Positions 14,256 to 58,168 of a stretch of 64,000 nt of DNA are shown here, in pieces. The first letter of the stretch is position 1. Each line of letters starts with the position of its first letter. This stretch comes from Heptranchias perlo (taxonomy: Eukaryota): positions 62,001 to 126,000 of the forward strand of contig NW_027139268.1 in the NCBI RefSeq assembly GCF_035084215.1. Reading direction: 5' to 3'. The notes beneath the pieces were generated by a model that worked only from the letters and a program-made list of their open reading frames with translations, had not been told where the DNA came from and did no database searches. The position numbers and the translations under genes are program-made.

Positions 14256-14504
14256 GGAATTGTAATCACACCAGGGAACATCGAGCAGATCTAAAAAAAA
14301 AGCAACTGCAATCAGTACTGAAGAAAATGAATCTTCAGACAAGACAACGCCCAGGCAGGCAGCAGAAAGTTCCTTTAAGTAACTGAGACTTTCAGAAACC
14401 AAGAGCTCCTTTTAATTGTTTCTGCCTCAACTTTCTGGGCAAAAATGGAAGAAAACAGAATCTGATTGGTTCAAATCTGACACTCCAAATGATCTCATGG
14501 TTCA

Positions 14505-17500: not shown

Positions 17501-18528
17501 AATCACACCGACAATCCCCAATCACACCGACAATCTCCAATCACACCGACAATCTCCAATCACACCGACAATCCCCAATCACACCCACAATCTCCAATCA
17601 CACCCACAATCTCCAATCACACCGACAATCCCCAATCACACCCACAATCTCCAATCACACCGACAATCTCCAATCACACCGATAATCTCCAATCACACCG
17701 ACAATCCCCAATCACACCGACAATCTCCAATCACACCGACAATCCCCAATCACACCGACAATCCCCAATCACACCGACAATCCCCAATCACACCGACAAT
17801 CTCCAATCACACCGACAATTCCCAATCACACCGACAATCTCCAATCACGCCGACAATCCCCAATCCCCAATCACACCGACAATCCCCAATCACACCGACA
17901 ATCCCCAATCACACCGACAATCCCCAATCACACCGACAATTCCCAATCACACCGACAATCTCCAATCACACCGACAATCCCCAATCACACCGACAATCTC
18001 CAATCACACCGACAATCCCCAATCACACCGACAATCCCCAATCACACCGACAATCCCCAATCACACCGACAATCCCCAATCACACCGACAATCCCCAATC
18101 ACACCGACAATCCCCAATCACACCGACAATCCCCAATCACACCGACAATTCCCAATCACACCGACAATCTCCAATCACACCGACAATCCCCAATCACACC
18201 GACAATCTCCAATCACACCGACAATCCCCAATCACACCGACAATCCCCAATCACACCGACAATCTCCAATCACACCGACAATCCCCAATCACACCGACAA
18301 TCCCCAATCACACCGACAATCCCCAATCACACCGACAATCCCCAATCACACCGACAATCTCCAATCACACCGACAATCCCCAATCACACCGACAATCCCC
18401 AATCACACCGACAATCCCCAATCACACCGACAATCCCCAATCACACCGACAATCTCCAATCACACCGACAATCACCAATCACACCGACAATTCCCAATCA
18501 CATCGACAATCCCCAATCACACCGACAA
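14505..18528. repeat. 19-bp minisatellite (CCGACAATCYCCAATCACR), ~210 units, gene A intron 1
   Basis: Direct tandem repeats. Confidence 0.98.
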
Positions 18529-19516: not shown

Positions 19517-19568
19517 CGGGAGAGACCCGGGAAAAACACAGGGATATGGAGAAAAGGATCAGCAGCAT
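19517..19568 (-). CDS. MHC class I-like gene A, exon 1 (leader) MLLILFSISLCFSRVSP
   Basis: ATG at 19568; hydrophobic 17-aa signal peptide; 52-nt exon ending CCC G|GTAAGT (phase 1); identical coding copy at 51805-51856. Confidence 0.88.
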
Positions 19569-19820: not shown

Positions 19821-20082
19821 ACGATCAAACTCAGACAGGCTGAGAAACCGAGTGGAAGAGAGAGATTGAAGAGGCCTCCGACACCAGGTCCATTTTAAAG
19901 GGAGGAGAGAGTGGGATCTTGGGCTCCCCACTCACAGGAAACACATTGAGAACGGGCCATCCCCAGGAACTGTGAAACTGACTCTGCTCTGGGCTGGAGT
20001 TAGACCACAAACAGGAACAGTTAGACACAACCTTTAATATAGTGAATATCACAAGGGAATTCACAGAGGAGAAACACACGGA

Positions 20083-22629: not shown

Positions 22630-23210
22630 AAAGACCCTGTTTTCTGCCTGTGAAACTTGGACAATATATTCACGTCACATTAAGAAAGGGACTCACTTTC
22701 CCCTCAGCTCCCTGAGACGACTAATGAAGATCAGATTGCAGGAGAAGATCCCTGACACCAAAGTCCTTCAAAAAGCTGAGATGCCGAGTATCGATGCTCT
22801 GATGGTGAGGACACGGCTACAATGGTCAGCTCATGTGGTGCGAGTGTCTGATGATCAAATCCTGAAGATGTTCTTTTATCGCACGTTGTCAACTGGGAAA
22901 CGATTTTGTGATGTTCAGCAAAAGGGACACAAAGACTGCTTAAAAGCAACTCTGAAACTGTACAAAATAGACGTCCATAAATGAGAACAAGTTGCTGAAG
23001 ATAAGAAGCCTGGGGAGGAACCATCCATGAAGACCCCTCCCACTATCAGGCCCATCACATTGCTGATGCTCAATGGAAACGGCAGCTGAGGGAATCTCGG
23101 CTGAAAAATCCAGATTCCCGACCGGGTGTATCGGTGACCCACTGTTCAATCTGTAATCACTCATTCACAGCAAATATAGGTCTCCATCATCAAAGGACTC
23201 ACTGCAGGAA
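22630..23210 (+). mobile_element. RTE/BovB-like LINE 3' fragment (paralog ~53950-54530)
   Basis: ACETWT..LRRLMKI..RLQWSAHVVR..LKATLK pattern of the RTE ORF C-terminus. Confidence 0.78.
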
Positions 23211-23212
23211 AT

Positions 23213-24059
23213 AAGAACATAAGAACAGAAGAAATAGGAGCAGGAGTAGGCCAATCGGCCCCTCGAGCCTGCTCCGCCATTCGATAAGATCATGGCTGAT
23301 CTGATCCTAACCTCAAATCTAAATTCATGTCCAATTTCCTGCCCGCTCCCCGTAACCCCTAATTCCCTTTACTTCTAGGAAACTGTCGATTTCTGTTTTA
23401 AATTTATTTAATGATGTAGCTTCCACAGCTTCCTGGGGCAGCAAATTCCACAGACCCACCACCCTCTGAGTGAAGAAGTTTCTCCTCATCTCAGTTTTGA
23501 AAGAACAGCCCCTTATTCTAAGATTATGCCCCCCAGTTCTAGTTTCACCCATCCTTGGGAACATCCTCACCGCATCCACCCGATCAAGCCCCTTCACAAT
23601 CTTATATGTTTCAATAAGATCGCCTCTCATTCTTCTGAACTCCAATGAGTAGAGTCCCAATCTACTCAACCTCTCCTCAAATGTCCACCCCCTCATCCCT
23701 GGGATAAACCGAGTGAACCTTCTTTGGACTGCCTCGAGAGCAAGTATGTCTTTTCTTAAGTATGGAGACCAAAACTGTATGCAGTATTCCAGGTGCGGTC
23801 TCACCAATACCTTATATAACTGCAGCAATACCTCCCTGTTTTTATATTCTATCCCCCGAGCAATAAAAGCCAACATTCCGTTGGCCTTCTTGATCACCTG
23901 CTGCACCTGCACACTAACTTTTTGATTTTCTTGCACTAGGACCCCCAGATCCCTTTGTACTGCAGTACTTTCCAGTTTCTCACCATTAAGATAATAACTT
24001 GCTCTCTGATTTTTCCTGCCAAAGTGCATAACCTCACATTTTCCAATATTGTATTGCAT
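23213..24059 (-). mobile_element. 5'-truncated young CR1 between genes A and B only
   Basis: Open 244-aa ORF2 C-terminus; empty site CAGGAAAT|GAGCTG at ~54534. Confidence 0.93.
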
Positions 24060-24419
24060 GAGCTGATATTCTGTGTGTCTTCTGCGATATGGAAGGAGGA
24101 GTGACGATGATGGGCACGTTTCACACTAGTACAGGTGAGTCCAGTTACCCAGCAACAAGGTTCTGTGAACATCCTGCAGTGGTTTACAGTGAACTGACGA
24201 GGGAAGGAATGGAGAGGCACAAGGCAATCGGTTAAAGCCAGCCTGAGGAATGGGAAAGGAAGGGTTAAACATTTAATAATGGGACTGTCACTATCGGCTT
24301 GGTCAGGGTGTGACAGTGGGGTTTATATACAGCTTGGTGAGTGTGTAATAGTGATTGTGATCACCAAACATTAATGGACATTTAAAGAGATAAATATTAA
24401 TGGTACATTTAAGGTGGTA

Positions 24420-25370: not shown

Positions 25371-25827
25371 GCGGGAAAATCGAAAGTTTACTTACTGAAA
25401 GACTCACGGAGGAGAGCGATCAGAGACTTCAGAAGCTGTGAAAATAAAAACAGAATAAAAATAGAATGTGAGATTAAACCATCTCCCAGCATTCACGAAA
25501 CCACCTCAGACAGGAAGAATATTCACTGAGGGGAGGAACCCCCCCACCCCGAGTCAGTGAGTCCAGGGGAGGGGGTGAGGGACTGGAGGGGGTCCCTCCT
25601 GTGTAACTCCCCCCACCCCGAGTCAGTGAGTCCAGGGGAGGGGGTGAGGGACTGGAGATGTTCACAGTCTGATCTCTGTTTCCTGATTGATCCATTCTTC
25701 CTCATTAATGGATCAAACTGTCTGATGGACATTTTGTTTCTCTGCGCAGTTAATGTTCAAATCAGATTGTAAAATAATTCACCAACACATCAAAACAATG
25801 ACTCGGATTATCCGAGCTGTTGTTTTT

Positions 25828-25850: not shown

Positions 25851-25997
25851 CTGGAAATACAGATTAAATATTTCACATTGTTTCTCTGCTGGATCGAGAA
25901 TCTCCTTCTGGAGAACTCCCAGGAGAATGAAATTCGACAACTTAATGTCCCTTATTATCCATTTCATCCCCAACAATCTGTCCCCTCCGTCACTTAC

Positions 25998-26030
25998 TGC
26001 CTGCTGTTATGTAAATCGGACTTGTTCGGT
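25998..26030 (-). CDS. MHC class I-like gene B, exon 6 (cytoplasmic) DRTSPIYITAG
   Basis: 33 nt between ttttctcctgcag| and |GTAAGT, phase 1; same length and YxxA position as HLA-A exon 6 (DRKGGSYSQAA). Confidence 0.8.
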
Positions 26031-26128
26031 CTGCAGGAGAAAAATAAATGTCAGTGAGAATGGGGATCTCCCAAAATCAGAGAGTCAGCACACAACAAGG
26101 TGGGGAAATGGAGAGTGTGGAATAAATG

Positions 26129-28385
26129 CTCAGTCTCACACCCCCCTTCAGTCTCACACTCCCCCCTTCAGTCCCACACTCCCCCCTTCAGTCTCACACT
26201 CCCCCCTTCAGTCTCACACTCCCCCCTTCAGTCTCACACTCCCCCCCTTCAGTCCCACACTCCCCCCTTCAGTCTCACACCCCCCTTCAGTCCCACACTC
26301 CACCCTTCAGTCTCACACTCCCCTTCAGTCTCACACTCCCCCCTTCAGTCTCACACTCCCCCCCTTCAGTCTCACACTCCCCCCTTCAGTCCCACACTCC
26401 CCCCTTCAGTCTCACACTCCCCCCTTCAGTCTCACACTCCCCCCTTCAGTCTCACACTCCCCCCTTCAGTCCCGCACTCCCCCCCTTCAGTCTCACACTC
26501 CCCCCCTTCAGTCTCACACTCCCCCCTTCAGTCCCACACACCCCCCTTCAGTCCCACACTCCCCCCTTCAGTCTCACACTCCCCCCTTCAGTCTCACACT
26601 CCCCCCTTCAGTCCCACACTCCCCCCCTTCAGTCCCACACTCCCCCCTTCAGTCTCACACTCCCCCCTTCAGTCTCACACTCCCCCCTTCAGTCCCACAC
26701 TCCCCCCCTTCAGTCCCACACTCCCCCCCTTCAGTCCCACACTCCCCGCTTCAGTCTCACACTCCCCCCTTCAGTCCCACACTCCCCTTCAGTCTCACAC
26801 TCCCCCCCTTCAGTCCCACACTCCCCCCTTCAGTCTCACACTCCCCCCTTCAGTCTCACACTCCCCCCTTCAGTCTCACACTCCCCCCCTTCAGTCTCAC
26901 ACTCCCCCCCCTTCAGTCTCACACTCCCCCCTTCAGTCTCACACTCCCCCCTTCAGTCCCACACTCCCCTTCAGTCTCACACTCCCCCCTTCAGTCTCAC
27001 ACTCCCCCCCTTCAGTCCCACACTCCCCCCTTCAGTCTCACACTCCCCCCCTTCAGTCCCACACTCCCCCCTTCAGTCCCGCACTCCCCCCCTTCAGTCC
27101 CGCACTCCCCCCCTTCAGTCCCGCACTCCCCCCTTCAGTCCCACACTCCCCCCCTTCAGTCCCACTCCCCCCCCTTCAGTCTCACACTCCCCCCTTCAGT
27201 CTCACACTCCCCCCTTCAGTCCCACACTCCCCCCTTCAGTCTCACACTCCCCCCCTTCAGTCCCACACTCCCCCCCTTCAGTCCCACACTCCCCCCCTTC
27301 AGCCCCACACTCCCCCCCTTCAGCCCCACACTCCCCCCCTTCAGTCCCACACTCCCCCCCTTCAGTCCCACACTCCCCCCTTCAGTCTCACACTCCCCCC
27401 TTCAGTCTCACACTCCCCCCTTCAGTCCCACACTCCCCCCTTCAGTCCCACACTCCCCCCTTCAGCCCCACACTCCCCCCCTTCAGTCTCACACTCCCCC
27501 CCTTCAGTCCCACACTCCCCCCTTCAGTCCCACACTCCCCTTCAGTCTCACACTCCCCCCTTCAGTCCCACACTCCCCCCTTCAGTCTCACACTCCCCCC
27601 TTCAGTCTCACACTCCCCCCCTTCAGTCCCACACTCCCCCCTTCAGTCCCACACTCCCCCCTTCAGTCTCACACTCCCCCCCTTCAGTCTCACACTCCCC
27701 CCTTCAGTCTCACACTCCCCCCTTCAGTCTCACACTCCCCCCTTCAGTCTCACACTCCCCCCCTTCAGTCCCACACTCCCCTTCAGTCTCACACTCCCCC
27801 CTTCAGTCTCACACTCCCCCCCTTCAGTCTCACACTCCCCCCCTTCAGTCTCACACTCCCCCCTTCAGTCCCACACTCCCCCCCTTCAGTCCCGCACTCC
27901 CCCCTTCAGTCTCACACTCCCCCCTTCAGTCTCACACTCCCCACCTTCAGTCTCACACTCCCCCCCTTCAGTCTCACACTCCCCCCCTTCAGTCTCACAC
28001 TCCCCCCTTCAGCCCCGCACTCCCCCCCTTCAGTCTCACACTCCCCCCCTTCAGTCCCGCACTCCCCCCCTTCAGTCTCACACTCCCCTTCAGTCTCACA
28101 CTCCCCCCCTTCAGTCTCACACTCCCCCCTTCAGTCCCACACTCCCCTTCAGTCTCACACTCCCCCCCTTCAGTCTCACACTCCCCCCCTTCAGTCTCAC
28201 ACTCCCCCCTTCAGCCCCGCACTCCCCCCCTTCAGTCCCACACTCCCCCCCTTCAGCCCCACACTCCCCCCCTTCAGCCCCACACTCCCCCCCTTCAGCC
28301 CCGCACTCCCCCCTTCAGTCTCACACTCCCCCCCTTCAGTCCCGCACTCCCCCCCCTTCAGTCCCGCACTCCCCCCCTTCAGTAC
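26129..28385. repeat. 20-21 bp minisatellite, gene B intron 5
   Basis: Same unit as 1-880. Confidence 0.97.
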
Positions 28386-30240
28386 CAGTACTGGAGACTC
28401 TCCCACACTCACTCTGTCCCCTCAGTTCTCCATTCCCCTCTCTCTGACTCTCCTCTCTCAGTGCCCTGTACTCCCAGTACTGGAGACTCTCCCACACTCA
28501 CTCTGTCCCCTCAGTTCTCCATTCCCCTCTCTCTGACTCTCCTCTCTCAGTGCCCTGTACTCCCAGTACTGGAGACTCTCCCACACTCACTCTGTCCCCC
28601 TCAGTTCTCCATTCCCCTCTCTCTGACTCTCCTCTCTCAGTGCCCTGTACTCCCAGTACTGGAGACTCTCCCACACTCACTCTGTCCCCTCAGTTCTCCA
28701 TTCCCCTCTCTCTGACTCTCCTCTCTCAGTGCCCTGTACTCCCAGTACTGGAGACTCTCCCACACTCACTCTGTCCCCCTCAGTTCTCCATTCCCCTCTC
28801 TCTGACTCTCCTCTCTCAGTGCCCTGTACTCCCAGTACTGGAGACTCTCCCACACTCACTCTGTCCCCCTCAGTTCTCCATTCCCCTCTCTCTGACTCTC
28901 CTCTCTCAGTGCCCTGTACTCCCAGTACTGGAGACTCTCCCACACTCACTCTGTCCCCCTCAGTTCTCCATTCCCCTCTCTCTGACTCTCCTCTCTCAGT
29001 GCCCTGTACTCCCAGTACTGGAGACTCTCCCACACTCACTCTGTCCCCCTCAGTTCTCCATTCCCCTCTCTCTGACTCTCCTCTCTCAGTGCCCTGTACT
29101 CCCAGTACTGGAGACTCTCCCACACTCACTCTGTCCCCCTCAGTTCTCCATTCCCCTCTCTCTGACTCTCCTCTCTCAGTGCCCTGTACTCCCAGTACTG
29201 GAGACTCTCCCACACTCACTCTGTCCCCTCAGTTCTCCATTCCCCTCTCTCTGACTCTCCTCTCTCAGTGCCCTGTACTCCCAGTACTGGAGACTCTCCC
29301 ACACTCACTCTGTCCCCCTCAGTTCTCCATTCCCCTCTCTCTGACTCTCCTCTCTCAGTGCCCTGTGCTCCCAGTACTGGAGACTCTCCCACACTCACTC
29401 TGTCCCCTCAGTTCTCCATTCCCCTCTCTCTGACTCTCCTCTCTCAGTGCCCTGTACTCCCAGTACTGGAGACTCTCCCACACTCACTCTGTCCCCTCAG
29501 TTCTCCATTCCCCTCTCTCTGACTCTCCTCTCTCAGTGCCCTGTACTCCCAGTACTGGAGACTCTCCCACACTCACTCTGTCCCCCTCAGTTCTCCATTC
29601 CCCTCTCTCTGACTCTCCTCTCTCAGTGCCCTGTACTCCCAGTACTGGAGACTCTCCCACACTCACTCTGTCCCCTCAGTTCTCCATTCCCCTCTCTCTG
29701 ACTCTCCTCTCTCAGTGCCCTGTACTCCCAGTGCTGGAGACTCTCCCACACTCACTCTGTCCCCCTCAGTTCTCCATTCCCCTCTCTCTGACTCTCCTCT
29801 CTCAGTGCCCTGTACTCCCAGTACTGGAGACTCTCCCACACTCACTCTGTCCCCTCAGTTCTCCATTCCCCTCTCTCTGACTCTCCTCTCTCAGTGCCCT
29901 GTACTCCCAGTACTGGAGACTCTCCCACACTCACTCTGTCCCCCTCAGTTCTCCATTCCCCTCTCTCTGATTCTCCTCTCTCAGTGCCCTGTACTCCCAG
30001 TACTGGAGACTCTCCCACACTCACTCTGTCCCCCTCAGTTCTCCATTCCCCTCTCTCTGACTCTCCTCTCTCAGTGCCCTGTACTCCCAGTACTGGAGAC
30101 TCTCCCACACTCACTCTGTCCCCCTCAGTTCTCCATTCCCCTCTCTCTGACTCTCCTCTCTCAGTGCCCTGTACTCCCAGTACTGGAGACTCTCCCACAC
30201 TCACTCTGTCCCCCTGAGTTCTCCATTCCCCTCTCTCTGA
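28386..30240. repeat. 89/90 bp minisatellite, ~21 units, gene B intron 5
   Basis: Same unit as 881-2640. Confidence 0.97.
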
Positions 30241-30247
30241 TTCTTAC

Positions 30248-30361
30248 CTCTCCGTTGTCTTTTCCAGATGACTATTCCGATTATCACCACTATAACAGCC
30301 AGCGCCGCAATCACTGATCCGATAATAATTCCCAGATTGGATTCCCTGTTTTCCGGTCTTT
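30248..30361 (-). CDS. MHC class I-like gene B, exon 5 (TM)
   Basis: Identical to the gene A TM exon, offset +27600. Confidence 0.9.
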
Positions 30362-35600: not shown

Positions 35601-35711
35601 CGGACTGCAGCGGTTCAAGAAGGCGGCTCATCATCACCTTCACAAGGGCAATTAGGGATGGGCAATAAATGCCGGCCTTGCCAGCGACATCCCATGAATT
35701 AATAAAAAAAA
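32611..35711 (+). mobile_element. Paralogous copy of the intron-4 LINE in gene B
   Basis: Same position and ends as the gene A copy, with different stops and indels. Confidence 0.93.
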
Positions 35712-35864
35712 GCGTCTCATGACTGTCATAATCAATATCTCACATGGACATTATTTCACTCGCTCGAACAAACACTCTCTCACACCCACACACACACACA
35801 CACACCCACAAACACACATACACACACACACACACACCCACACACTTCCAGTGCAGTTCCTTAC

Positions 35865-36143
35865 CCCACTGATAGACCTTTGCCTCCGCCAGGCTGCTGT
35901 GTTCAATTTGACAGGAGTATTGATCCTCATCCCCAGCATTGACTTCAATCTCTTTCTTGATCTGATGGGTCCCATCGTGGTTCGGTCGAACCCCCGAGGA
36001 TTGGCTCTCAGACACTTGCTCACCATTCCTTAGCCAGGTCACCTCGATGTTTACAGGGTAAAATCCAGTAACCAGGCAGGAGAGAGTGGGCGGGTTGTAC
36101 TGATTATTGGGGTCACTTCTGGAGATGAACACTTCAGGCTGAA
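35865..36143 (-). CDS. MHC class I-like gene B, exon 4 (alpha3)
   Basis: 279 nt Ig C1 domain; 1 aa difference from gene A (R/Q). Confidence 0.96.
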
Positions 36144-36257
36144 CTGAAAGGGGAAAGGGAGGAAACACAAACAATAGAGAGACAGAGAATGGAATGGGAT
36201 AACGGTTTCATAGATCAGAAAGTTCAATCAGAAAATGGGAAAATAGGAAATCAATAC

Positions 36258-36533
36258 CTTTCCTTTTGAGATATTCCTTTCCAGCGCGTAAATATAACTG
36301 TAAAACATCAACCAGTTCTTCTTCCAACTGCCATTTCCAATAATTGTTCCAGGAATCATCAGAATCCCATTTCTCCTTGGTCTTCACTGCAAGGTGATTG
36401 GTTGCGACCCATCTCATTCTGTCTGGCTCTAAACTAATATAATCCTTTCCGTCATATCCAAACCGCATCGATCTCTTAATGGAGCCGTCTTCAGAGATCT
36501 CAACATTCCTTATCCATTGGAAAATGTGAATTC
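36258..36533 (-). CDS. MHC class I-like gene B, exon 3 (alpha2), lacking C101 and C164
   Basis: 276 nt, open; 5 aa differences from gene A. Confidence 0.95.
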
Positions 36534-36609
36534 CTGTCAGTGACCAACCAGAGATCAATAATCAATAATCAATAGTTAATGGAGAATGTCCATTTATAAC
36601 TCAGACAGT

Positions 36610-36792
36610 GGGCGCAATTTTAACCTAACCCACCCGTCGGGAAACTAACGGGAGTGGTTGCAACACTGGTTTTACACACTGCCCGATTTTACTGCACTGA
36701 AGTCAGTGGACAGTAATATTGGGCACAGTGTAAAACTCTCATTCCCCCTATCCCATGGGGATCCCACCCGGTGAGATCGGTGAAAATTACCC
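36610..36792. mobile_element. MITE-like element, gene B intron 2 only
   Basis: Similar to 2834-3008; imperfect TIRs; ACAGT on both sides; absent at ~9205 in gene A. Confidence 0.55.
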
Positions 36793-38374
36793 ACAGTGTG
36801 TCTTTCTCCCTCTATACAGGAATGGGATGGGTTAGAGTCACATGGTCTGAGCAGAGGCGAAAGGGGGTCCAGTATCAGGTAGAAATGGGGGGTAAGATTT
36901 GTTAACCCCTTCTGAACCGTGACAGAATTATAGAAGGCAATATCACGGTAAATCTCAGATAATAGGCACCATTTTTATCACATGACTTCCCCTCCCCCAC
37001 TTCTCGAACTCGATACCCGTGAGTGCCGCTGGTGCACTGCCCTTGAGGACCAGAACCAGGTGTATATTTCTGATGTGCCAGTGGGCCTGTTTTGGGAACC
37101 ACACTGGCCCCAAACCTCCATTTTGCCCCAATGTTGCGCTGCTGAGCCTGGATTTCTGGGAGCCAATCCAGTCCCGTACTGACCACCCGCAAATCACACA
37201 CTCATCTCATTTACACACCCACTGGCATTGGCTGAGCGCAGCGCCCATGTGACACGGACCTCCCCTGACGGGTGGGGGTGGGGATTTAAAGCGCAGTCTT
37301 TAAAGAGCCGCAAATGGCTGAAGATTGCAGCAGAGGGAAGGATCTAAACTTTCCCCCAAGACTGGGGTCCCATCAGGAGCTGGAATAAGAGGCTCATGTG
37401 AGATATTGTGAGACTTTTAAACAATGTGGTCACGGGAGGAGCAGGCAGAGGGTCTGGGAGAAGGGAGCAGGGCATTGGAAGGAGGGAGAATAGAAGATCC
37501 CAAAATTATAATGAGAACAACCATCAGACACTGATAGATGGAACAGGCAAAGGGAAGAGAGAGCGANNNNNNNNNNNNNNNNNNNNNNNNNNNNNNNNNN
37601 NNNNNNNNNNNNNNNNNNNNNNNNNNNNNNNNNNNNNNNNNNNNNNNNNNNNNNNNNNNNNNNNNNNNNNNNNNNNNNNNNNNNNNNNNNNNNNNNNNNN
37701 NNNNNNNNNNNNNNNNNNNNNNNNNAGAGAGAGATAAAGGGAGAGACAGACTGAGGGAGAGAGAGGGAGACTGACAGACAATGAGAGAGAGTTAGATAGA
37801 GACAGAGATAGGCAGAGATCGATTGACAGAGAAAGAGAGTGAGAGGGAGATAGAGACGTGAAGAGAGAGAGAGAGACGGAGACAGAGCGAGAGAGAGACA
37901 GAGAAAGGGAGTCAGAGAGCGACAGGAAGAAAGATAGAGAGAGATAGGAGATCGATATCGGGATAGATAGAGAGAGACATAGAAAGAGAAAGAGAGAGAC
38001 AGAGAGGGTGAGAGAGAGCGAGAGAGTTAGAGACACAGAGAAAGACAGAGATAGAGAGACAGAAAGAGAGATAGGAAAGAGATATAGTGACAGATAGAGA
38101 CAGAGTGAGAGAGAGATAGAGATAGAGAGAGAGACAGAGAGACAGAGAGAAAGAAAGTGAGAGAGAAAAATAGTGAGAGAAAGAGACTGCTCATGGGAGT
38201 AAAGCTCAGAAAGATGTCTCATGTGCCATGTCGAGGAAGGTAGCAGTGACACTAGCACTGAGCACCAACTCTCACCTCTAGGACTGCAGACAAGTGCCAG
38301 AAGAAGTGCAATGACCTGAAAAGGGCAGGCAAGGTAATGCACCATCCAGTCTCCACTGCAGGTATCATACCATC

Positions 38375-41562: not shown

Positions 41563-41823
41563 CGGATGTCTTGTTCGTCCATTTCAATATTGTACTGAGA
41601 TTCTCCATCGTCACATCGTGACGCTTTTTCCGCTGACGATTGATATAATTCCATTGTTCCACATCGAAAGAGTCTGTTACGAACTGCTGTCTGGAAACCA
41701 CCTGCTGAGTGTCACTGTCATAATACGTTAACACAACTCCATTAACCATCGTCACACCCGCAAACTCAGGGCCATCCGTGTTGCCGGAAATTCCCGTGTA
41801 CACCACAGTGAAGGAATCAGAGT
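41563..41823 (-). CDS. MHC class I-like gene B, exon 2 (alpha1)
   Basis: 261 nt, open, GT-AG; paralog of 12336-12596 with 19 aa differences; N86 sequon NKT. Confidence 0.92.
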
Positions 41824-42732: not shown

Positions 42733-44077
42733 GACAAAATTAGTCTCCACTTGGAGAAGCAAGGATTAATCAGGGATAGTCAACATGGCTTTGTCAAGGG
42801 AAGATCATGTCTGACTAATTTGATTGAATTTTTTGAGGGGGTGACTAGGCGTGTGGATGAGGGTAACGCAGTGGATGTGGTATACATGGATTTCAGTAAG
42901 GCCTTCGATAAAGTCCCCCACAGGAGACTGGTCAAGAAGGTATGAGCCCATGGAATCCAGGGTGCCTTGGCACTTTGGATACAAAACTGGCTTCGTGGCA
43001 GAAGGCAGAGGGTGATGGTCGAAGGTTGTTTTTGTGACTGGAAGCCTGTGGCCAGTGGGGTACCACAGGGATCGGTGCTGGGTCCCTTGCTGTTTGTGGT
43101 CTACATTAATGACTTGGATATGAATGTAAAAGGTATGATCAGTAAGTTCGCTGATGATACAAAAATTGGTAGGGTGGTAAATAGCGAGGAGGATAGCCTC
43201 AGTCTGCAGGACGATATAGATGGGTTGGTCAGATGGGCGGAACAGTGGCAAATGGAATTTAACCCAGAAAAGTGCGAGGTGATGCACTTTGGAGGGACTA
43301 ACAAGGCAAGGGAATACACAATGAATGGGAGGACCCTAGGCAAGACAGAGGGTCAGAGGGATCTTGGTGTGCAAGTTCACAGATCCCTGAAGGCGGCGGA
43401 ACAGGTAGATAAGGTAGTAAAGAAGGCATATGGGATACTTGCCTTTATTAGCCGAGGCATAGAATATAAGAGCAAGGAGGTTATGATGGAGCTGTATAAA
43501 ACACTGGTTAGGCCACAGCTGGAGTACTGTGTGCAGTTCTGGTCGCCACACTACAGGAAGGATGTGATTGCTTTGGAGAGGGTGCAGAGGAGATTCACCA
43601 GGATGTTACCAGGGCTGGAGCGCTTCAGCTATGAAGAGAGACTGGGAAGATTGGGTTTGTTTTCCTTGGAGCAGAGGAGGCTGAGGGGGGACATGATTGA
43701 GGTGTACAAAATTATGAGGGGCACAGATAGGATGGATACTAAGGAGCTTTTTCCCTTCGTTGAGGGTTCTATAACAAGGGGACAGAGATTCAAGGTAAAA
43801 GGCGGGAGGTTTAGATGGGATTTGAGAAAGAACTTTTTCACCCAGAGGGTGGTTGGAGTCTGGAACTCACTGCCTGAAAGTGTTGTGGAGGCAGGAACCC
43901 TCACAACATTCAAGAAGCAATTAGATGAGCACTTGAAATGCCATAGCATACAAGGCTACGGACCAAATGCTGGAATATGGGATCAGAGTAGACAGGGCTG
44001 ATGGCCGGCGCGGACACGATGGGCCGAAGGGCCTCTATCCGTGCTGGATAACTCGATGACTCCATGACTCAATGACT
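42733..44077 (+). mobile_element. 5'-truncated CR1 of a second family, gene B intron 1 only
   Basis: QHGF, DFSKAFD, PQGSVLGP, FADD, RPQLEYC motifs; (ACTCNATG)n tail; empty site ATGGAAG|AAAACAGAATC at ~14451. Confidence 0.94.
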
Positions 44078-44129
44078 AAAACAGAATCTGATTGGTTCAA
44101 ATCTGACCCTCCAAATGATCAGATTGCTT

Positions 44130-47100
44130 CACACCGACAATCCCCGATCACACCGACAATTCCCAATCACACCGACAATCTCCAATCACAACGACAATCC
44201 CCAATCACACCGACAATTCTCAATCACACCGACAATCTCCAATCACACCGACAATCCCCAATCACACCGACAATCTCCAATCACACCGACAATCCTCAAT
44301 CACACCGACAATCTCCAATCACACCGACAATCCCCAAACACACCGACAATCTCCAACCACACCGACAATCCCCAATCACACCGACAATCTCCAATCACAC
44401 CGACAATCCCCAATCACACCGACAATCCCCAATCACACCGACAATTCCCAATCACACCGACAATCTCCAATCACACCGACAATCCCCAATCACACCGACA
44501 ATTCCCAATCACACCGACAATCTCCAATCACACCGACAATCCCCAATCACACCGACAATCCCCAATCACACCGACAATCTCCAATCACACCGACAATCCC
44601 CAATCACACCGACAATCTCCAATCACACCGACAATCCCCAATCACACCGACAATCCCCAATCCCCAATCACACCGACAATCTCCAATCACACCGACAATC
44701 TCCAATCACACCGACAATCCCCAATCACACCGACAATCCCCAATCCCCAATCACACCGACAATCCCCAATCACACCGACAATCCCCAATCCCCAATCACA
44801 CCGACAATCTCCAATCACGCCGACAATCCCCAATCACACCGACAATCCCCAATCACACCGACAATCTCCAATCACACCGACAATCTCCAATCACACCGAC
44901 AATCCCCAATCACACCGACAATCCCCAATCACACCGACAATCCCCAATCACACCGACAATTCCCAATCACACCGACAATCCCCAATCACACCGACAATCT
45001 CCAATCACACCGACAATCCCCAATCACACCGACAATCTCCAATCACACCGACAATCCCCAATCACACCGACAATCCCCAATCACACCGACAATCTCCAAT
45101 CACACCGACAATCCCCAATCACACCGACAATCCCCAATCCCCAATCACACCGACAATCTCCAATCACACCGACAATCTCCAATCACACCGACAATCCCCA
45201 ATCACACCGACAATCCCCAATCCCCAATTACACCGACAATCCCCAATCACACCGACAATCCCCAATCCCCAATCACACCGACAATCTCCAATCACGCCGA
45301 CAATCCCCAATCACACTGACAATCCCCAATCACACCGACAATCTCCAATCACACCCACAATCCCCAATCACACCGACAATCCCCAATCACACCCACAATC
45401 TCCAATCACACCCACAATCCCCAATCACACCGACAATCCCCAATCACACCCACAATCTCCAATCACACCCACAATCTCCAATCACACCCACAATCCCCAA
45501 TCACACCGACAATCCCCAATCACACCGACAATCCCCAATCACACCGACAATCTCCAATCACACCGACAATCCCCAATCACACCGACAATCTCCAATCACA
45601 CCGACAATCTCCAATCACACCCACAATCCCCAATCACACCGACAATCCCCAATCACACCGACAATCCCCAATCACACCGACAATCTCCAATCACACCGAC
45701 AATCCCCAATCGCACCGACAATCCCCAATCACACCAACAATCCCCAATCCCCAATCACACCGACGATCCCCAATCACACCGACGATCTCCAATCACACCA
45801 ACAATCCCCAATCCCCAATCACACCCACAATCCCCAATCACACCGACAATCCCCAATCACACCGACAATCCCAAATCACACCGACAATCCCCAATCACAC
45901 CCACAATCCCCAATCACACCCACAATCTCCAATCACGCCGACAATCTCCAATCACGCCGACAATCCCCAATCACGCCGACAATCCCCAATCACGCCGACA
46001 ATCCCCAATCACGCCGACAATCCCCAATCACGCCGACAATCTCCAATCCCCAATCACACCCACAATCCCCAATCACGCCGACAATCCCCAATCACGCCGA
46101 CAATCCCCAATCACGCCGACAATCTCCAATCCCCAATCACACCAACAATCCCCAATCCCCAATCACACCCACAATCCCCAATCACACCGACAATCCCCAA
46201 TCACTCCAACAATCCCCAATCACGCCGACAATCCCCAATCACGCCGACAATCCCCAATCACGCCGACAATCCCCAATCACGCCGACAATCCCAAATCATA
46301 CCCACAATCCCCAATCACACCGACAATCCCCAATCACACCGACAATCTCCAATCACACCGACAATCTCCAATCACACCGACAATCTCCAATCACACCGAC
46401 AATCCCCAATCCCACCGACAATCCCCAATCCCACCGACAATCCCCAATCACACCGACAATCTCCAATCACACCGACAATCTCCAATCACACCCACAATCT
46501 CCAATCACGCCGACAATCTCCAATCACGCCGACAATCCCCAATCACGCCGACAATCCCCAATCACGCCGACAATCCCCAATCACGCCGACAATCTGCAAT
46601 CACACCGACAATCCCCAATCACACCGACAATCCCCAATCACACCGACAATCCCCAATCACACCGACAATCTCCAATCACACCGACAATCTCCAATCCCCA
46701 ATCACGCCGACAATCCCCAATCACGCCGACAATCCCCAATCACACCGACAATCTGCAATCACACCGACAATCCCCAATCACACCGACAATCCCCAATCAC
46801 ACCGACAATCTCCAATCACACCGACAATCCCCAATCACACCGACAATCCCCAATCACATCGACAATCCCCAATCACACCGACAATCTCCAATCACGCCGA
46901 CAATCCCCAATCACGCCGACAATCCCCAATCACGCCGACAATCCCCAATCACGCCGACAATCTCCAATCACGCCGACAATCTCCAATCACACCGACAATC
47001 CCCAATCACACCGACAATCTCCAATCACACCGACAATCTCCAATCACACCCACAATCCCCAATCACACCGACAATCCCCAATCACATCGACAATCCCCAA

Positions 47101-50100
47101 TCACACCGACAATCTCCAATCACGCCGACAATCCCCAATCACGCCGACAATCTCCAATCACACCCACAATCTCCAATCACGCCGACAATCCCCAATCACA
47201 CCGACAATCTCCAATCACGCCGACAATCTCCAATCACACCCACAATCTCCAATCACGCCGACAATCCCCAACCACGCCGACAATCCCCAATCACGCCGAC
47301 AATCCCCAATCACGCCGACAATCTCCAATCACGCCGACAATCCCCAACCACGCCGACAATCCCCAATCACACCCACAATCCCCAATCACACCGACAATCC
47401 CCAATCACACCGACAATCTCCAATCACACCGACAATCTCCAATCACACCGACAATCTCCAATCACACCGACAATCCCCAATCCCACCGACAATCCCCAAT
47501 CCCACCGACAATCCCCAATCACACCGACAATCTCCAATCACACCGACAATCTCCAATCACACCCACAATCTCCAATCACGCCGACAATCTCCAATCACGC
47601 CGACAATCCCCAATCACGCCGACAATCCCCAATCACGCCGACAATCCCCAATCACGCCGACAATCTGCAATCACACCGACAATCCCCAATCACACCGACA
47701 ATCCCCAATCACACCGACAATCCCCAATCACACCGACAATCTCCAATCACACCGACAATCTCCAATCCCCAATCACGCCGACAATCCCTAATCACGCCGA
47801 CAATCTCCAATCACACCGACAATCTCCAATCACACCCACAATCTCCAATCACACCGACAATCCCCAATCACGCCGACAATCTGCAATCACACCGACAATC
47901 CCCAATCACACCGACAATCCCCAATCACACCGACAATCTCCAATCACACCGACAATCTCCAATCACACCCACAATCCCCAATCACATCGACAATCCCCAA
48001 TCACACCGACAATCTCCAATCACGCCGACAATCCCCAATCACGCCGACAATCCCCAATCACGCCGACAATCTCCAATCACGCCGACAATCCCCAATCACG
48101 CCGACAATCCCCAATCACGCCGACAATCTCCAATCACGCCGACAATCTCCAATCACGCCGACAATCCCCAATCACGCCGACAATCCCCAATCACGCCGAC
48201 AATCCCCAATCACGCCGACAATCCCCAATCACGCCGACAATCCCCAATCACGCCGACAATCCCCAATCACGCCGACAATCCCCAATCACGCCGACAATCC
48301 CCAATCACGCCGACAATCCCCAATCACGCCGACAATCCCCAATCACGCCGACAATCCCCAATCACGCCGACAATCTCCAATCACGCCGACAATCCCCAAT
48401 CACGCCGACAATCTCCAATCACGCCGACAATCTCCAATCACACCGACAATCTCCAATCACGCCGACAATCCCCAATAACGCCGACAATCCCCAAACACGC
48501 CGACAATCCCCAATCACACCGACAATCCGCAATCACGCCCAGAATCCCCAATCACGCCGACAATCTCCAATCACACCCACAATCCCCAATCGCACCCACA
48601 ATCCCCAATCACACCAACAATCCCCAATCACACCCACAATCTCCAATCACGCCGACAATCTCCAATCACACCGACAATCTCCAATCACACCGACAATCCC
48701 CAATCACGCCGACAATCCCCAATCACGCCGACAATCCCCAATCACGCCGACAATCCCCAATCACGCCGACAATCTCCAATCACGCCGACAATCTCCAATC
48801 ACACCGACAATCTCCAATCACGCTGACAATCCCCAATCACGCCGACAATCCCCAAACACGCCGACAATCCCCAATCACGCCGACAATCCCCAATCACGCC
48901 GACAATCCGCAATCCCCAATCACACCGACAATCCCCAATCACACCGACAATCCCCAATCACACCGACGATCCCCAATCACACCGACAATCCCCAATCACA
49001 CCGACAATCCCCAATCACACCGACAATCTCCAATCACACCGACAATCCCCAATCACACCGACAATCCCCAATCACACCGACAATCTCCAATCACACCGAC
49101 AATCCCCAATCACACCGACAATCCCCAATCACGCCGACAATCCCCAATCACGCCGACAATCCCCAATCACACCGACAATCTGCAATCACACCGACAATCC
49201 CCAATCACACCGACAATCCCCAATCACACCGACAATCTCCAATCACACCGACAATCTCCAATCCCCAATCACACCGACAATCCCCAATCACACCGACAAT
49301 CCCCAATCACGCCGACAATCCCCAATCACGCCGACAATCTCCAATCACGCCGACAATCTCCAATCACGCCGACAATCTCCAATCACGCCGACAATCCCCA
49401 ATCACGCCGACAATCTCCAATCACGCCGACAATCCCCAATCACGCCGACAATCCCCAATCACGCCGACAATCTCCAATCACGCCGACAATCTCCAATCAC
49501 GCCGACAATCTCCAATCACGCCGACAATCCCCAATCACGCCGACAATCCCCAATCACGCCGACAATCCCCAATCACGCCGACAATCCCCAATCACGCCGA
49601 CAATCCCCAATCACGCCGACAATCCCCAATCACGCCGACAATCCCCAATCACGCCGACAATCCCCAATCACGCCGACAATCCCCAATCACGCCGACAATC
49701 CCCAATCACGCCGACAATCTCCAATCACGCCGACAATCTCCAATCACACCGACAATCCCCAATCTCCAATCACGCCGACAATCTCCAATCACGCCGACAA
49801 TCCCCAATCACTCCGACAATCTCCAATCACGCCGACAATCTCCAATCACGCCGACAATCTCCAATCACACCGACAATCCCCAATCACGCCGACAATCTCG
49901 AATCACACCGACAATCCCCAATCACACCCACAATCTCCAATCACGCCGACAATCCCCAATCACGCCGACAATCCCCAATCACGCCGACAATCCCCAATCG
50001 TGCCGACAATCCCCAAACACGCTGACAATCCCCAATCACACCGACAATCCGCAATCACACCCACAATCCCCAATCACGCCGACAATCTCCAATCACACCC

Positions 50101-50909
50101 ACAATCCCCAATCGCACCCACAATCCCCAATCACATCGACAATCCCCAATCACACCCACAATCCCCAATCACACCCACAATCTCCAATCACACCGACAAT
50201 CCCCAATCACACCGACAATCTCCAATCACACCGACAATCCCCAATCACAACGACAATCCCCAATCACACCGACAATCTCCAATCACACCGACAATCCCCA
50301 ATCACACCGACAATTCCGAATCACACCGACAATCCCCAATCACACCGACAATCCCCAATCACACCGACAATCCCCAATCACACCGACAATCCCCAATCAC
50401 GCCGACAATCCCCAAACACGCCGACAATCCCCAATCCCCAATCACACCAACAATCCCCAATCACACCGACAATCCCCAATCACACCGACAATCCCCAATC
50501 ACACCGACAATCCACAATCACACCGACAATCCCCAATCACACCGACAATCCCCAATCACACCGACAATCCCCAATCACACCGACAATCCCCAATCACACC
50601 GACAATCCCCAATCACACCGACAATCCACAATCACACCGACAGTCCCCAATCACGCCGACAATCTCCAATCACACCGACAATCCCCAATCACACCGACAA
50701 TCCCCAATCACACCCACAATCCCCAATCACAACCACAATCTCCAATCACGGCGACAATCCCCAATCACACCGACAATCCCCAATCACACCGACAATCCCC
50801 AATCACGCCGACAATCCCCAATCACGCCGACAATCCCCAATCACACCGACAATCCCCAATCACGCCGACAATCCCCAATCACACCGACAATCCCCAATCA
50901 CACCAACAA
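44130..50909. repeat. 19-bp minisatellite, ~355 units, gene B intron 1
   Basis: Same unit, longer array. Confidence 0.98.
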
Positions 50910-51804
50910 CTGTCCCAGTCGAAAAATATCATATTTCCTTTGTAAAACACTGAGAATCGAACCCACGTGTTCGCAGGTCGGGGTACGTAGTAGGAACAGA
51001 GGAATAAATGTCGGACAATGGCCTATTGAGCCTCCACTGAGATTTCTTGTTGCCATGGTTGCTGAAACTCTAATCCCAATTCCCTCTCCTTTCTCCATAT
51101 TCCTTAATGCCATTATTTCCAATGTAAACATCCCTCTCCTTGTTGCACACCCAGTGGATGTTGTTTGGACAGCAAGTCCCACATTGTCACACTGTTTGTG
51201 AGCAGTAAATTTTCTTATGATCACTTTTACTCAGCTCATCTCAAATGATGTCCTCTGTTAATANNNNNNNNNNNNNNNNNNNNNNNNNNNNNNNNNNNNN
51301 NNNNNNNNNNNNNNNNNNNNNNNNNNNNNNNNNNNNNNNNNNNNNNNNNNNNNNNNNNNNNNNNNNNNNNNNNNNNNNNNNNNNNNNNNNNNNNNNNNNN
51401 NNNNNNNNNNNNNNNNNNNNNNNNNNNNNNNNNNNNNNNNNNNNNNNNNNNNNNNNNNNNNNNNNNNNNNNNNNNNNNNNNNNNNNNNNNNNNNNNNNNN
51501 NNNNNNNNNNNNNNNNNNNNNNNNGAGAGAAAGAAAGACACACACTCAGAGATAGAAAGAGACAGAGAGAGAGACAGAGAGAGAGTGATGAGGAGAGAGA
51601 GATATGGAGAGCAAAAAATACAAAGCTGGACAGACAAAGTGAGCTCTCCCCTGTGAGTGCAATATACCGACACACATTCCCCGCACTCACAGACAGTCCC
51701 ACCCCCAGGAAAATCGCAGGGAATTTCCTGCCCAGACCCTGAGCTGGAGAAGTGAAAGTGGCAGAGAAAGAGAGTGAGATTGGAAGGATGAATTCTGTAC
51801 TTAC

Positions 51805-51856
51805 CGGGAGAGACCCGGGAAAAACACAGGGATATGGAGAAAAGGATCAGCAGCAT
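51805..51856 (-). CDS. MHC class I-like gene B, exon 1 (leader)
   Basis: Same 52-nt exon and G|GTAAGT donor as gene A. Confidence 0.88.
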
Positions 51857-57890: not shown

Positions 57891-58037
57891 CTGGAAATAC
57901 AGATTAAATATTTCACATTGTTTCTCTGCTGGATCGAGAATCTCCTTCTGGAGAACTCCCCGGAGAATGAAATTCGACAACTTAATGTCCCTTATTATCC
58001 ATTTCATCCCCAACAATCTGTCCCCTCCGTCACTTAC

Positions 58038-58070
58038 TGCCTGCTGTTGTGTAAATCGGACTTGTTCGGT
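58038..58070 (-). CDS. MHC class I-like gene C, exon 6 (cytoplasmic) DRTSPIYTTAG; upstream exons lie beyond 64000
   Basis: Paralog of 25998-26030 (+32040) with one I>T change; same splice sites. Confidence 0.78.
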
Positions 58071-58168
58071 CTGCAGGAGAAAAATAAATGTCAGTGAGAA
58101 TGGGGATCTCCCAAAATCAGAGAGTCAGCACACAACAAGGTGGGGAAATGGAGAGTGTGGAATAAATG

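What the first reader, a model, noticed from the sequence alone, without database searches (positions are those of the whole stretch)
36258..36533. Apparently intact class I-like genes that have lost both alpha2 disulfide cysteines
Seen: aligned by eye to HLA-A2, QRMYGC101 corresponds to QWIR(T/N)V and LEGTC164VEWL corresponds to LEEELVD(L/V)L, so C101>V and C164>L in both genes A and B. Alpha1 and alpha2 contain no cysteine at all, yet frames, splice sites, the alpha3 Cys pair, the N86 sequon and the b2m-facing residues (T10, H93, Q96, D119, G120, D122) are retained. Known: the C101-C164 bond is nearly invariant in class I and class I-like proteins. Inference: paired replacement by aliphatic residues looks like a compensated, selected change, so this may be a structurally distinct nonclassical lineage rather than decay.
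Basis: partly seen in the sequence, partly recalled or inferred. Interest (0 to 1): 0.85.

Follow-up and report, generated by a model that had tools for sequence, protein, structure and literature searches.

The report
Shark class I genes without alpha2 disulfide
Two neighbouring, expressed shark immune genes of the MHC class I type really do lack a normally near-universal disulfide bond, but this is the shared hallmark of a large shark-wide gene family rather than a peculiarity of these two genes.

Summary
Window 36258-36533 (minus strand) is an intact 276-nt alpha2 exon of an MHC class I gene, with Val at the C101 position and Leu at the C164 position. Gene A (8866-9141) has the same pair. 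Alpha1 and alpha2 hold no cysteine; the alpha3 pair is kept.

The window is from Heptranchias perlo. Gene B is already a RefSeq model (XP_067834355, "F10 alpha chain-like"). Contigs of four runs from one sample cover the exons only and carry exact alpha1-alpha2, alpha2-alpha3 and alpha3-TM joints, so the gene is transcribed and spliced.

The trait is not special to these genes:
- In 82 relatives from 13 shark species, none of the 78 with a residue at position 101 has Cys (Val in 73).
- Position 164 varies (L, F, Y, C, S, D, G).
- All 35 other class I sequences have C101 and 34 have C164.
- The family is monophyletic (support 100). Gene B's sublineage keeps Leu164 in 23 of 24 members and occurs in all 13 species.

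The family is most probably the published multicopy shark lineage UEA. I could not open that paper to see whether the cysteine loss is stated there. The scan noted the same trait in neighbouring genes of this genome.

The parts
36258..36533 (-). Gene B alpha2 exon (276 nt, phase 1/1). Val (C101 position) is codon 36502-36504 and Leu (C164 position) is codon 36313-36315.
   Evidence: It is 100% identical to residues 106-196 of RefSeq-derived P0169. Spliced contigs cover it.
35865..36143 (-). Gene B alpha3 exon (C1-set Ig domain, Cys pair kept)
   Evidence: Pfam C1-set E=1.5e-18. Boundaries. The joint 36143->36258 is seen in 4 of 4 runs.
41563..41823 (-). Gene B alpha1 exon (no Cys; NKTS sequon)
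   Evidence: A contig's loose end at the alpha2 acceptor matches 41564-41593 exactly, and nowhere else in the window.
51805..51856 (-). Gene B leader exon (MLLILFSISLCFSRVSP, GTAAGT donor), about 10 kb upstream of alpha1 across a satellite-filled intron
30248..30361 (-). Gene B connecting-peptide/transmembrane exon
   Evidence: The loose end at the alpha3 donor equals 30332-30361; the same 30 letters also occur in gene A at 2732-2761.
25407..25436 (-). Gene B cytoplasmic exon (SEVSDRSPP) used by RefSeq isoforms. There is also an optional exon near 25996-26031 and alternative terminal exons at 23984-24241 and 23168-23200.
   Evidence: tblastn of the tails of RefSeq-derived isoforms P0256-P0261 and of P0169. 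Short matches, so coordinates are approximate.
8866..9141 (-). Gene A alpha2 exon (same V/L replacement; 5 of 91 residues differ from gene B)
   Evidence: A-type bases are seen in the contigs at 5 of the 7 variant places listed.
8472..8750 (-). Gene A alpha3 exon
12336..12596 (-). Gene A alpha1 exon (19 of 86 residues differ from gene B)
19517..19568 (-). Gene A leader exon (identical to gene B's)
2648..2761 (-). Gene A transmembrane exon (identical to gene B's)

Best explanation
Genes A and B are two tandemly duplicated, transcribed members of a large, shark-only, nonclassical MHC class I multigene family in Heptranchias perlo. The family is most probably the lineage published as UEA.

The family's common ancestor lost the alpha2 C101-C164 disulfide. 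Position 101, on the sheet floor, became a fixed Val. Position 164, on the alpha2 helix, became a free residue that differs between sublineages. In gene B's sublineage it is a conserved Leu.

Shown:
- intact exons and canonical splice sites;
- spliced transcripts;
- family-wide absence of Cys101;
- monophyly of the family;
- conservation of the alpha3 Cys pair, the N86 sequon and the beta2m-contact residues;
- a confident class I fold in the prediction.

Inferred:
- The Val/Leu side chains pack hydrophobically where the disulfide used to staple the helix to the floor.
- The protein still pairs with beta2m as a membrane glycoprotein.
- The loss is part of a remodelling of the groove end that normally holds the peptide N-terminus. 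There Y7 is gone in all 82 members and Y159 is mostly gone, while the C-terminal anchors T143, K146 and W147 are largely kept.
- The groove therefore probably takes ligands held by their C-terminal or hydrophobic part rather than classical 8-10-mers clamped at both ends.
For: Gene structure.

Domains: (MHC_I E=1e-16; C1-set E=1.5e-18).

Identity with RefSeq: P0169 (XP_067834355.1, Heptranchias perlo) is 100% identical to gene B's alpha1 and alpha2 exons.

Transcription:
- Depth is 0 in the intron bin 36188-36248, and 0 or at most 2.6 across the upstream intron bins 36676-37500.
- Coverage lies on 35865-36145 and 36258-36534.
- A GT..AG joint 36143->36258 appears in 4 of 4 runs, all from one sample.
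- Loose ends match the TM exon and gene B's own alpha1 end.

Family: 108 proteins among 870 candidates. All those with 51% identity or more over at least half of the query and named for an organism are from 13 selachian species; rays reach only 36-37%.

Residue counts: position 101 is V73 I2 L2 A1 with 4 gaps, so 0 Cys of 78. Position 164 is L28 F20 Y7 C6 S6 D5 G4 and others. The outgroup has C in 35 of 35 and 34 of 35.

Tree:
- The family lies on one side of a branch with SH-aLRT 100.
- Gene B sits in a 7-row clade (support 100) with Pristiophorus, Heterodontus, Mustelus, Cetorhinus and Chiloscyllium.
- The 24-row clade around it has Leu164 in 23 of 24 rows and holds all 13 species.

Fold: AlphaFold2 gives ectodomain pLDDT 92-98 per 10-residue block. 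Foldseek gives TM 0.86-0.92 (target-normalised) and rmsd 2.1-2.8 to solved class I chains among the listed matches, including shark 6lup.

Groove residues.

Literature: sharks have two expanded class Ib families, UBA (derived from UAA) and the more ancient UEA (passages of PMC12562908). UEA is multicopy and MHC-linked (passages of PMC10751288).
Against: - No sequence labelled UEA was available, so the family name rests on elimination and on my recall of the 2021 abstract.
- The runs are labelled only 'RNA? (a guess)' and come from one sample. They are Logan contigs, which merge paralogues. At 36017 and 36418 every contig carries gene A's base, not gene B's, so gene-B-specific expression rests mainly on one contig's alpha1 end and on exact-match pieces.
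- The A-versus-B comparison is underpowered for selection. dN/dS is 0.37 for alpha2 (5 nonsynonymous, 3 synonymous) and 0.27 for alpha3 (1, 1). The exon identities (97.1% and 99.3%) are no higher than some neighbouring noncoding DNA at 97.4-99.2%.
- Contact between Val101 and Leu164 could not be measured, because the tool gives no model coordinates.
- Beta2m pairing and the ligand type are inference.
- The tree was made with the quick method, with a long-branch warning at the root of the family.
Confidence: 0.8

Rival explanations
1. Genes A and B are recently duplicated pseudogenes or decaying copies, and the missing cysteines are part of that decay.
For: - Alpha1 dN/dS between A and B is 0.85.
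- The exons are not clearly more conserved than some flanking noncoding DNA.
- RefSeq isoforms have odd tails that read into repeat-derived sequence, and one is a 912-aa fusion model.
Against: - All five exons of both genes are open, with canonical splice sites.
- Spliced transcripts exist.
- The same Val101 is seen in 73 of 78 relatives from 13 species, and Leu164 in 23 of 24 members of the sublineage. That cannot be recent decay.
- The alpha3 Cys pair, N86 and the beta2m-contact residues are kept.
- The predicted fold is confident.
Confidence: 0.05
2. The family is a shark class Ib lineage distinct from every published one (not UEA), so the disulfide-less lineage itself is undescribed.
For: No hit carries a lineage name; all names are automatic RefSeq ones. 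The UEA paper could not be opened, so no direct match was made.
Against: - Reviews list only two expanded shark families. UBA is said to derive from classical UAA, whereas this family is only 20-34% identical to the other class I rows in A1.
- Its shark-only range, many copies per genome and loss of the peptide-terminus anchors fit what I recall of the UEA abstract.
- The authors surveyed genomes of Rhincodon and Chiloscyllium, which hold this family (recalled).
- A family this large is unlikely to have been missed.
Confidence: 0.1
3. Genes A and B are not two loci but two haplotypes, or an assembly expansion of one locus, so the 'pair' is an artefact. The cysteine loss would still be real.
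For: The window has four N gaps and very long satellite arrays, which make assembly hard. Both A-type and B-type bases occur in one individual's transcripts, as two alleles also would.
Against: - The units lie in tandem on one contig. They differ in length (27-32 kb) and in identity by region (89-99%).
- Alpha1 differs at 19 of 86 residues.
- RefSeq models further copies on the same 453-kb scaffold, and the scan noted more copies 5.7 kb and 108 kb beyond the window.
Confidence: 0.05

Closest known systems
Shark nonclassical class I lineage UEA (Almeida et al. 2021, J Immunol 207:824; seen only as a citation and in review passages, otherwise recalled)
   Same: It is found only in sharks, is multicopy, is very divergent from classical class I, has mostly lost the peptide-terminus anchors, and has several sublineages (passages).
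   Different: Nothing is shown to differ. The identity is inferred, not demonstrated. I could not see whether the paper reports the missing alpha2 cysteines, or whether Hexanchiformes were sampled.
Classical shark class I UAA (solved structure 6lup) and other classical class I (chicken BF2, duck, Anolis 7cpo)
   Same: Same exon plan, the same three-domain fold in the prediction (TM 0.90-0.92), the alpha3 Cys pair, the N86 sequon, and T143/K146/W147.
   Different: No C101-C164 bond. Y7, Y59 and Y159 are replaced in gene B (V, Q, Q). Only about 30-34% identity.
CD1 and the CD1-like shark genes UFA/UGA (review passage)
   Same: They are nonclassical class I genes with hydrophobic groove substitutions, and are MHC-linked in sharks according to the reviews.
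   Different: UFA and UGA are single- or low-copy and occur in rays too, whereas this family is highly expanded and found only in sharks. Classical class I and MR1 chains, not CD1, top the fold search. CD1 keeps its alpha2 disulfide (recalled).
Teleost nonclassical lineages S and P (Grimholt et al. 2015, PMC4364491, passages)
   Same: Divergent class Ib lineages with altered groove residues.
   Different: That paper calls the alpha2 and alpha3 cysteines 'hallmarks of MHCI' and reports them conserved in the S and P lineages. Here the alpha2 pair is absent in the whole family.

Membership tests
MHC class I heavy chain (Pfam PF00129 + C1-set) | Alpha1/alpha2 groove domain recognised by the MHC_I profile | tested here: met
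   The alpha2 exons score E=1e-16 and 5.7e-17, above the 28.3-bit cut-off. The alpha1 exons alone score 24.9 and 24.2 bits, below the cut-off.
MHC class I heavy chain (Pfam PF00129 + C1-set) | Membrane-proximal C1-set Ig domain with its Cys pair, followed by a TM segment | tested here: met
   C1-set E=1.5e-18 and 4.2e-18. The Cys pair is present. The TM exon is present and is spliced to alpha3 in the contigs.
MHC class I heavy chain (Pfam PF00129 + C1-set) | Alpha2 intradomain disulfide C101-C164 (called a 'hallmark' in PMC4364491) | tested here: not met
   V and L stand at the two positions. This is the finding itself. It does not remove the genes from the class I superfamily, since the fold and the profile match stand.
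Classical (peptide-presenting) class Ia | [quoted passage not shown] | tested here: not met
   Gene B has V, Q, W, T, K, W, Q, Y at these positions. In the family Y7 is 0 of 82 and Y159 is 15 of 82.
Shark UEA lineage | Found in sharks (Selachii), not in rays or chimaeras (recalled from the abstract) | tested here: met
   All hits with 51% identity or more over at least half of the query and named for an organism come from 13 selachian species. The best ray hits reach 36-37% identity and keep both Cys. The search is word-based, so very distant kin could be missed.
Shark UEA lineage | Large multigene family | tested here: met
   There are many distinct 90%-identity clusters per species, for example at least 14 for Chiloscyllium punctatum and 12 for Hemiscyllium ocellatum in alignment A1. 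The window holds two copies, and more are noted nearby.
Shark UEA lineage | MHC linkage (UEA cluster near beta2m/brd2; PMC10751288 passage) | not testable with these tools
Shark UEA lineage | Clusters with sequences named UEA | not testable with these tools
   No labelled UEA sequence was returned by any search, and the paper is not held.

The most novel reading that the evidence does not exclude
The loss of the alpha2 disulfide at the root of a very old, highly expanded and expressed shark class I family may be an unreported adaptive redesign. On this reading the loss freed the alpha2 helix at the A-pocket end of the groove and turned position 164 into a specificity-determining residue that diversified by sublineage (L, F, Y, G, S, D, C). 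The result would be class I molecules that fold without the oxidoreductase-dependent step and that open or reshape the end of the groove normally holding the peptide N-terminus. If so, this would be the only large, conserved class I lineage known to work without that bond.
Probability: 0.2. Interest if true: 0.6.

Novelty: new member of a known kind. Interest (0 to 1): 0.35.

Why it matters
The C101-C164 bond is treated as a hallmark of class I molecules. From recalled work on HLA and H-2 mutants, breaking it impairs assembly. A family that has done without it across all 13 sampled shark species, while keeping the fold, the alpha3 domain and the C-terminal anchors, is a natural experiment on how the groove can be stabilised and reshaped. 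It also gives a simple sequence signature (Val101, no Cys) for recognising this family in shark genomes. For these two genes alone the result is ordinary: they are typical members, already in RefSeq.

Tried and rejected
Steps that led nowhere or gave weak results:
- translated the exon from its first base and gave stops, because the exon is in phase 1. The ORF list and a script fixed this.
- I tried four times to open the two J Immunol papers on shark class Ib lineages. Neither is held.
- Searches for a statement on UEA cysteines found none. A search for class I lineages that lack the alpha2 disulfide gave only general papers.
- PMC6769792 and PMC6523485 (passages) say nothing useful. PMC9586880 (passages) only cites the shark papers.
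The gene tables of PMC10751288 could have tied RefSeq gene ids to lineage names.
- Val101-Leu164 contact in the model could not be measured, because no coordinates are given.
- I rejected positive selection as the sole cause of the alpha1 divergence. The noncoding DNA beside alpha1 is also more divergent (89-95% identity) than that beside alpha2-TM (97-99%).
- A second joint, 36145->36316, in 3 of 4 runs has non-canonical ends and 'between: not known'. I treat it as a paralogue or an artefact.
Searches with window sequence were done exon by exon. Full-length work used the public RefSeq-derived proteins by id.

Full report
WHAT IS THERE

The finding's coordinates are exactly one exon on the minus strand. 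Window 36258-36533 is 276 nt, preceded by ...ctgacAG and followed by GTattg. It is in phase 1 at both ends and open through 91 full codons. Pfam's MHC_I profile matches it over profile positions 93-179 of 179, the alpha2 half (E=1e-16, 61.4 bits, cut-off 28.3). Gene A's copy at 8866-9141 scores 5.7e-17.

I mapped five exons for each gene, all with AG/GT boundaries and phase 1.

| Exon | Gene B | Gene A |
|---|---|---|
| Leader | 51856-51805 | 19568-19517 |
| Alpha1 | 41823-41563 | 12596-12336 |
| Alpha2 | 36533-36258 | 9141-8866 |
| Alpha3 | 36143-35865 | 8750-8472 |
| TM | 30361-30248 | 2761-2648 |

Short cytoplasmic exons follow for gene B near 26.0, 25.4, 24.1 and 23.2 kb. The two genes sit in a tandem duplication with a unit of 27-32 kb. 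A LINE in the alpha3-TM intron is shared by both units, so the duplication is younger than that insertion.

THE CYSTEINES

A HMMER alignment of the exon to solved class I chains places Val opposite the Cys of '..YGCEL..' and Leu opposite the Cys of '..EETCIEW..' in 7cpo_A. One search names 7cpo as Anolis carolinensis MHC I.

- The Val codon is at 36502-36504 and the Leu codon at 36313-36315.
- Neither gene has a cysteine anywhere in alpha1 or alpha2.
- The alpha3 pair and the N86 sequon are kept, as are H93, Q96, D119, G120 and D122.

WHOSE GENOME, AND IS THE GENE KNOWN

A search of 1.84 billion representative proteins with the exon gave 598 hits at E<=0.001. A handful reached 65-80% identity and also lack the cysteines.

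I then searched with one of these, Heterodontus P0004 residues 18-290. It returned 108 proteins among 870 candidates. Every named hit with 51% identity or more over at least half of the query is a RefSeq 'class I histocompatibility antigen ... alpha chain-like' or 'uncharacterized' protein. One further hit of that kind, from JGI, carries no name or organism. They come from 13 sharks: Heptranchias, Pristiophorus, Heterodontus, two Scyliorhinus, Mustelus, Carcharodon, Cetorhinus, Stegostoma, two Chiloscyllium, Hemiscyllium and Rhincodon. The best ray proteins reach 36-37%.

P0169 (XP_067834355.1, Heptranchias perlo, on a 453-kb scaffold) is 100% identical to gene B's alpha1 and alpha2 exons. The window is therefore from the sharpnose sevengill shark, and gene B is already a RefSeq model with seven isoforms. 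Gene A appears inside a 912-aa fusion model.

EXPRESSION

Four runs from one sample of one study hold 40-53% of the sampled words of the alpha3-alpha2 stretch. I then laid the runs on 35700-37500.

- Contigs lie on 35865-36145 and 36258-36534.
- Depth is 0 in the intron bin 36188-36248 and close to 0 (at most 2.6) in the upstream intron bins 36676-37500, with minor depth in the two intron bins just upstream of the exon (36554-36675).
- A joint 36143->36258 with ends CT..AC (GT..AG on the gene's strand) is present in 4 of 4 runs. One 171-letter contig crosses it without a mismatch.
- The loose end at 35865 equals the start of the TM exon, which is the same in both genes.
- The loose end at 36534 in run X1 equals 41564-41593, gene B's alpha1 end. 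It is found nowhere else in the window, even allowing 3 mismatches.

The tool labels the runs only as a guess at RNA. Exon-only cover with exact joints shows that they are RNA.

There are caveats. This is one sample. These are contigs, not reads. Of the seven variant places listed, five carry gene A's base, and at 36017 and 36418 no contig carries gene B's base. Several family members are therefore expressed, and gene-B-specific evidence is thin.

THE TRAIT BELONGS TO THE WHOLE FAMILY

In alignment A1 there are 82 shark family rows and 35 other class I rows.

| Position | Shark family | Other class I |
|---|---|---|
| 101 | V 73, I 2, L 2, A 1, gap 4 (0 Cys of 78) | C in 35 of 35 |
| 164 | L 28, F 20, Y 7, C 6, S 6, D 5, G 4, W/H/T 1 each, gap 3 | C in 34 of 35 |
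| Alpha3 Cys pair | 79 of 79 and 80 of 82 | not part of this comparison |

A BLAST count over all stored proteins agrees. Of 170 alpha2 matches below 50% identity that cover both positions, 162 have both Cys, 8 lack one and none lacks both.

I built a maximum-likelihood tree of the ectodomain with the two trait columns left out (117 rows, 272 columns, quick search, LG+G4).

- The 82 shark rows lie on one side of a branch with SH-aLRT 100.
- The tool warns that long branches meet at this join.
- Gene B groups with Pristiophorus, Heterodontus, Mustelus, Cetorhinus and Chiloscyllium proteins in a 7-row clade (support 100).
- The wider 24-row clade has Leu at 164 in 23 of 24 rows and holds all 13 species.
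- Other clades carry their own state at 164 (F, G, S, D, Y, C).

The cysteine at 101 was therefore lost once, before the split of the two great shark groups. Val has been held since. Position 164 is fixed within sublineages but differs between them.

SELECTION BETWEEN A AND B

Nei-Gojobori counts:

| Exon | Nonsynonymous | Synonymous | dN/dS |
|---|---|---|---|
| Alpha1 | 23 | 7 | 0.85 |
| Alpha2 | 5 | 3 | 0.37 |
| Alpha3 | 1 | 1 | 0.27 |
| Leader, TM | 0 | 0 | identical |

Noncoding identity between the two units ranges from 89% to 99% by region.

| Noncoding region | Identity |
|---|---|
| Alpha2-alpha3 intron | 97.4% |
| LINE-bearing intron | 94.5% |
| Beside alpha1 | 89-95% |
| Upstream of the leader | 99.2% |

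The A/B comparison alone therefore cannot show constraint. The case for function rests on the deep conservation, the intact structure and the transcripts.

FOLD

AlphaFold2 on A1, with the public protein P0169 as first row, gives pLDDT 92-98 for every 10-residue block of the ectodomain. Val115 lies in strand 107-117 and Leu178 in helix 164-188. Foldseek finds chicken, duck, fish, shark (6lup) and MR1 heavy chains at TM 0.86-0.92 (target-normalised) and rmsd 2.1-2.8 A. The best sequence match among solved chains is only E=3.6e-17, so no solved structure of this family is in the PDB copy.

HOW IT LIKELY WORKS

From established class I structures (recalled), C101 sits on the floor strand under the alpha2 helix. 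C164 sits on that helix between residues 163 and 167, at the groove end that holds the peptide N-terminus.

In this family that same end is rebuilt:
- Y7 is absent in 82 of 82 rows (V in 50).
- Y159 is kept in only 15.
- Y59 is F or Y in 69 rows, but Q in gene B.

The other end is largely kept: T143 in 61, K146 in 72, W147 in 81 of 81.

I infer that Val101 and the residue at 164 pack against each other in place of the bond. The helix at that end is free to sit differently. The groove probably binds ligands held by their C-terminal or hydrophobic part. Pairing with beta2m is inferred from the conserved contact residues.

WHAT IT IS CALLED

Passages of a 2025 review say that sharks have two expanded class Ib families, UBA (derived from classical UAA) and the more ancient UEA, plus single-copy UDA, UFA and UGA (PMC12562908). 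Passages of Verissimo et al. 2023 call UEA multicopy and MHC-linked (PMC10751288).

This family is multicopy, found only in sharks and only 20-34% identical to the other class I rows of A1. By elimination it is UEA. My recall of the 2021 abstract fits: shark-only, very large family, hydrophobic groove, three sublineages.

I could not open that paper, and no search of the held library found a statement about its cysteines. Whether the loss is in print remains open. Grimholt et al. 2015 (passages) call the alpha2 and alpha3 cysteines hallmarks of class I and find them in the teleost S and P lineages.

EARLIER NOTES OF THIS SCAN

The scan recorded the same trait in class I genes 5.7 kb and 108 kb beyond this window. 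This agrees with a cluster of family members. I did not examine those stretches.

VERDICT

The genes are functional-looking and expressed. The missing disulfide is the signature of a known, shark-wide class Ib family, probably UEA, and not a novelty of these two genes. Interest is modest unless the family-wide loss turns out to be unreported.

Noticed in passing
window 25900-30247, 1-2647 and 58000-64000: A satellite with a unit of about 89-90 bp starts directly at the splice donor of the TM exon in both genes and runs for 2.6 to more than 4 kb. The cytoplasmic exons lie beyond it. The array creates many long spurious ORFs on both strands.
   Followed up: partly
window 14416-18528 and 44072-50945: Intron 1 of both genes (leader to alpha1, 7-10 kb) is filled by a short-unit satellite that reads as a spurious open frame of up to 2276 codons (PQSHRQSPITPTIPNHTDN repeats). 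It is not a gene.
   Followed up: no
window 19834-19992 vs 19518-19568; 52122-52280 vs 51806-51856: A terminal coding exon used by an isoform of the upstream neighbour (P0161) lies only about 270 bp from the next gene's start codon. RefSeq also holds a 912-aa fusion model across two copies (P0255). The genes are packed head to tail and may be read through.
   Followed up: partly
window 12336-12596 vs 41563-41823 and flanks: Alpha1 differs at 19 of 86 residues between A and B, while the leader and TM exons are identical and alpha3 differs at 1 of 92. The noncoding DNA beside alpha1 is also more divergent (89-95% identity) than that beside alpha2-TM (97-99%). A regional cause, such as gene conversion or a mosaic origin, is as likely as selection on alpha1 alone.
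   Followed up: partly
window 36145->36316: A second joint that skips 170 letters, with non-canonical ends, appears in 3 of 4 runs. It may come from a paralogue or be an assembly artefact of the contigs.
   Followed up: no
P0005 and P0011 (database proteins): Some family members are modelled without the alpha3 domain, with alpha2 joined directly to the TM segment. These could be real alpha3-less isoforms or faulty gene models.
   Followed up: no
P0165 (Heptranchias) and 5 other family rows, alignment A1 position 178: Six family members carry a Cys at position 164 with no partner at 101. This unpaired cysteine on the alpha2 helix could form other bonds.
   Followed up: no
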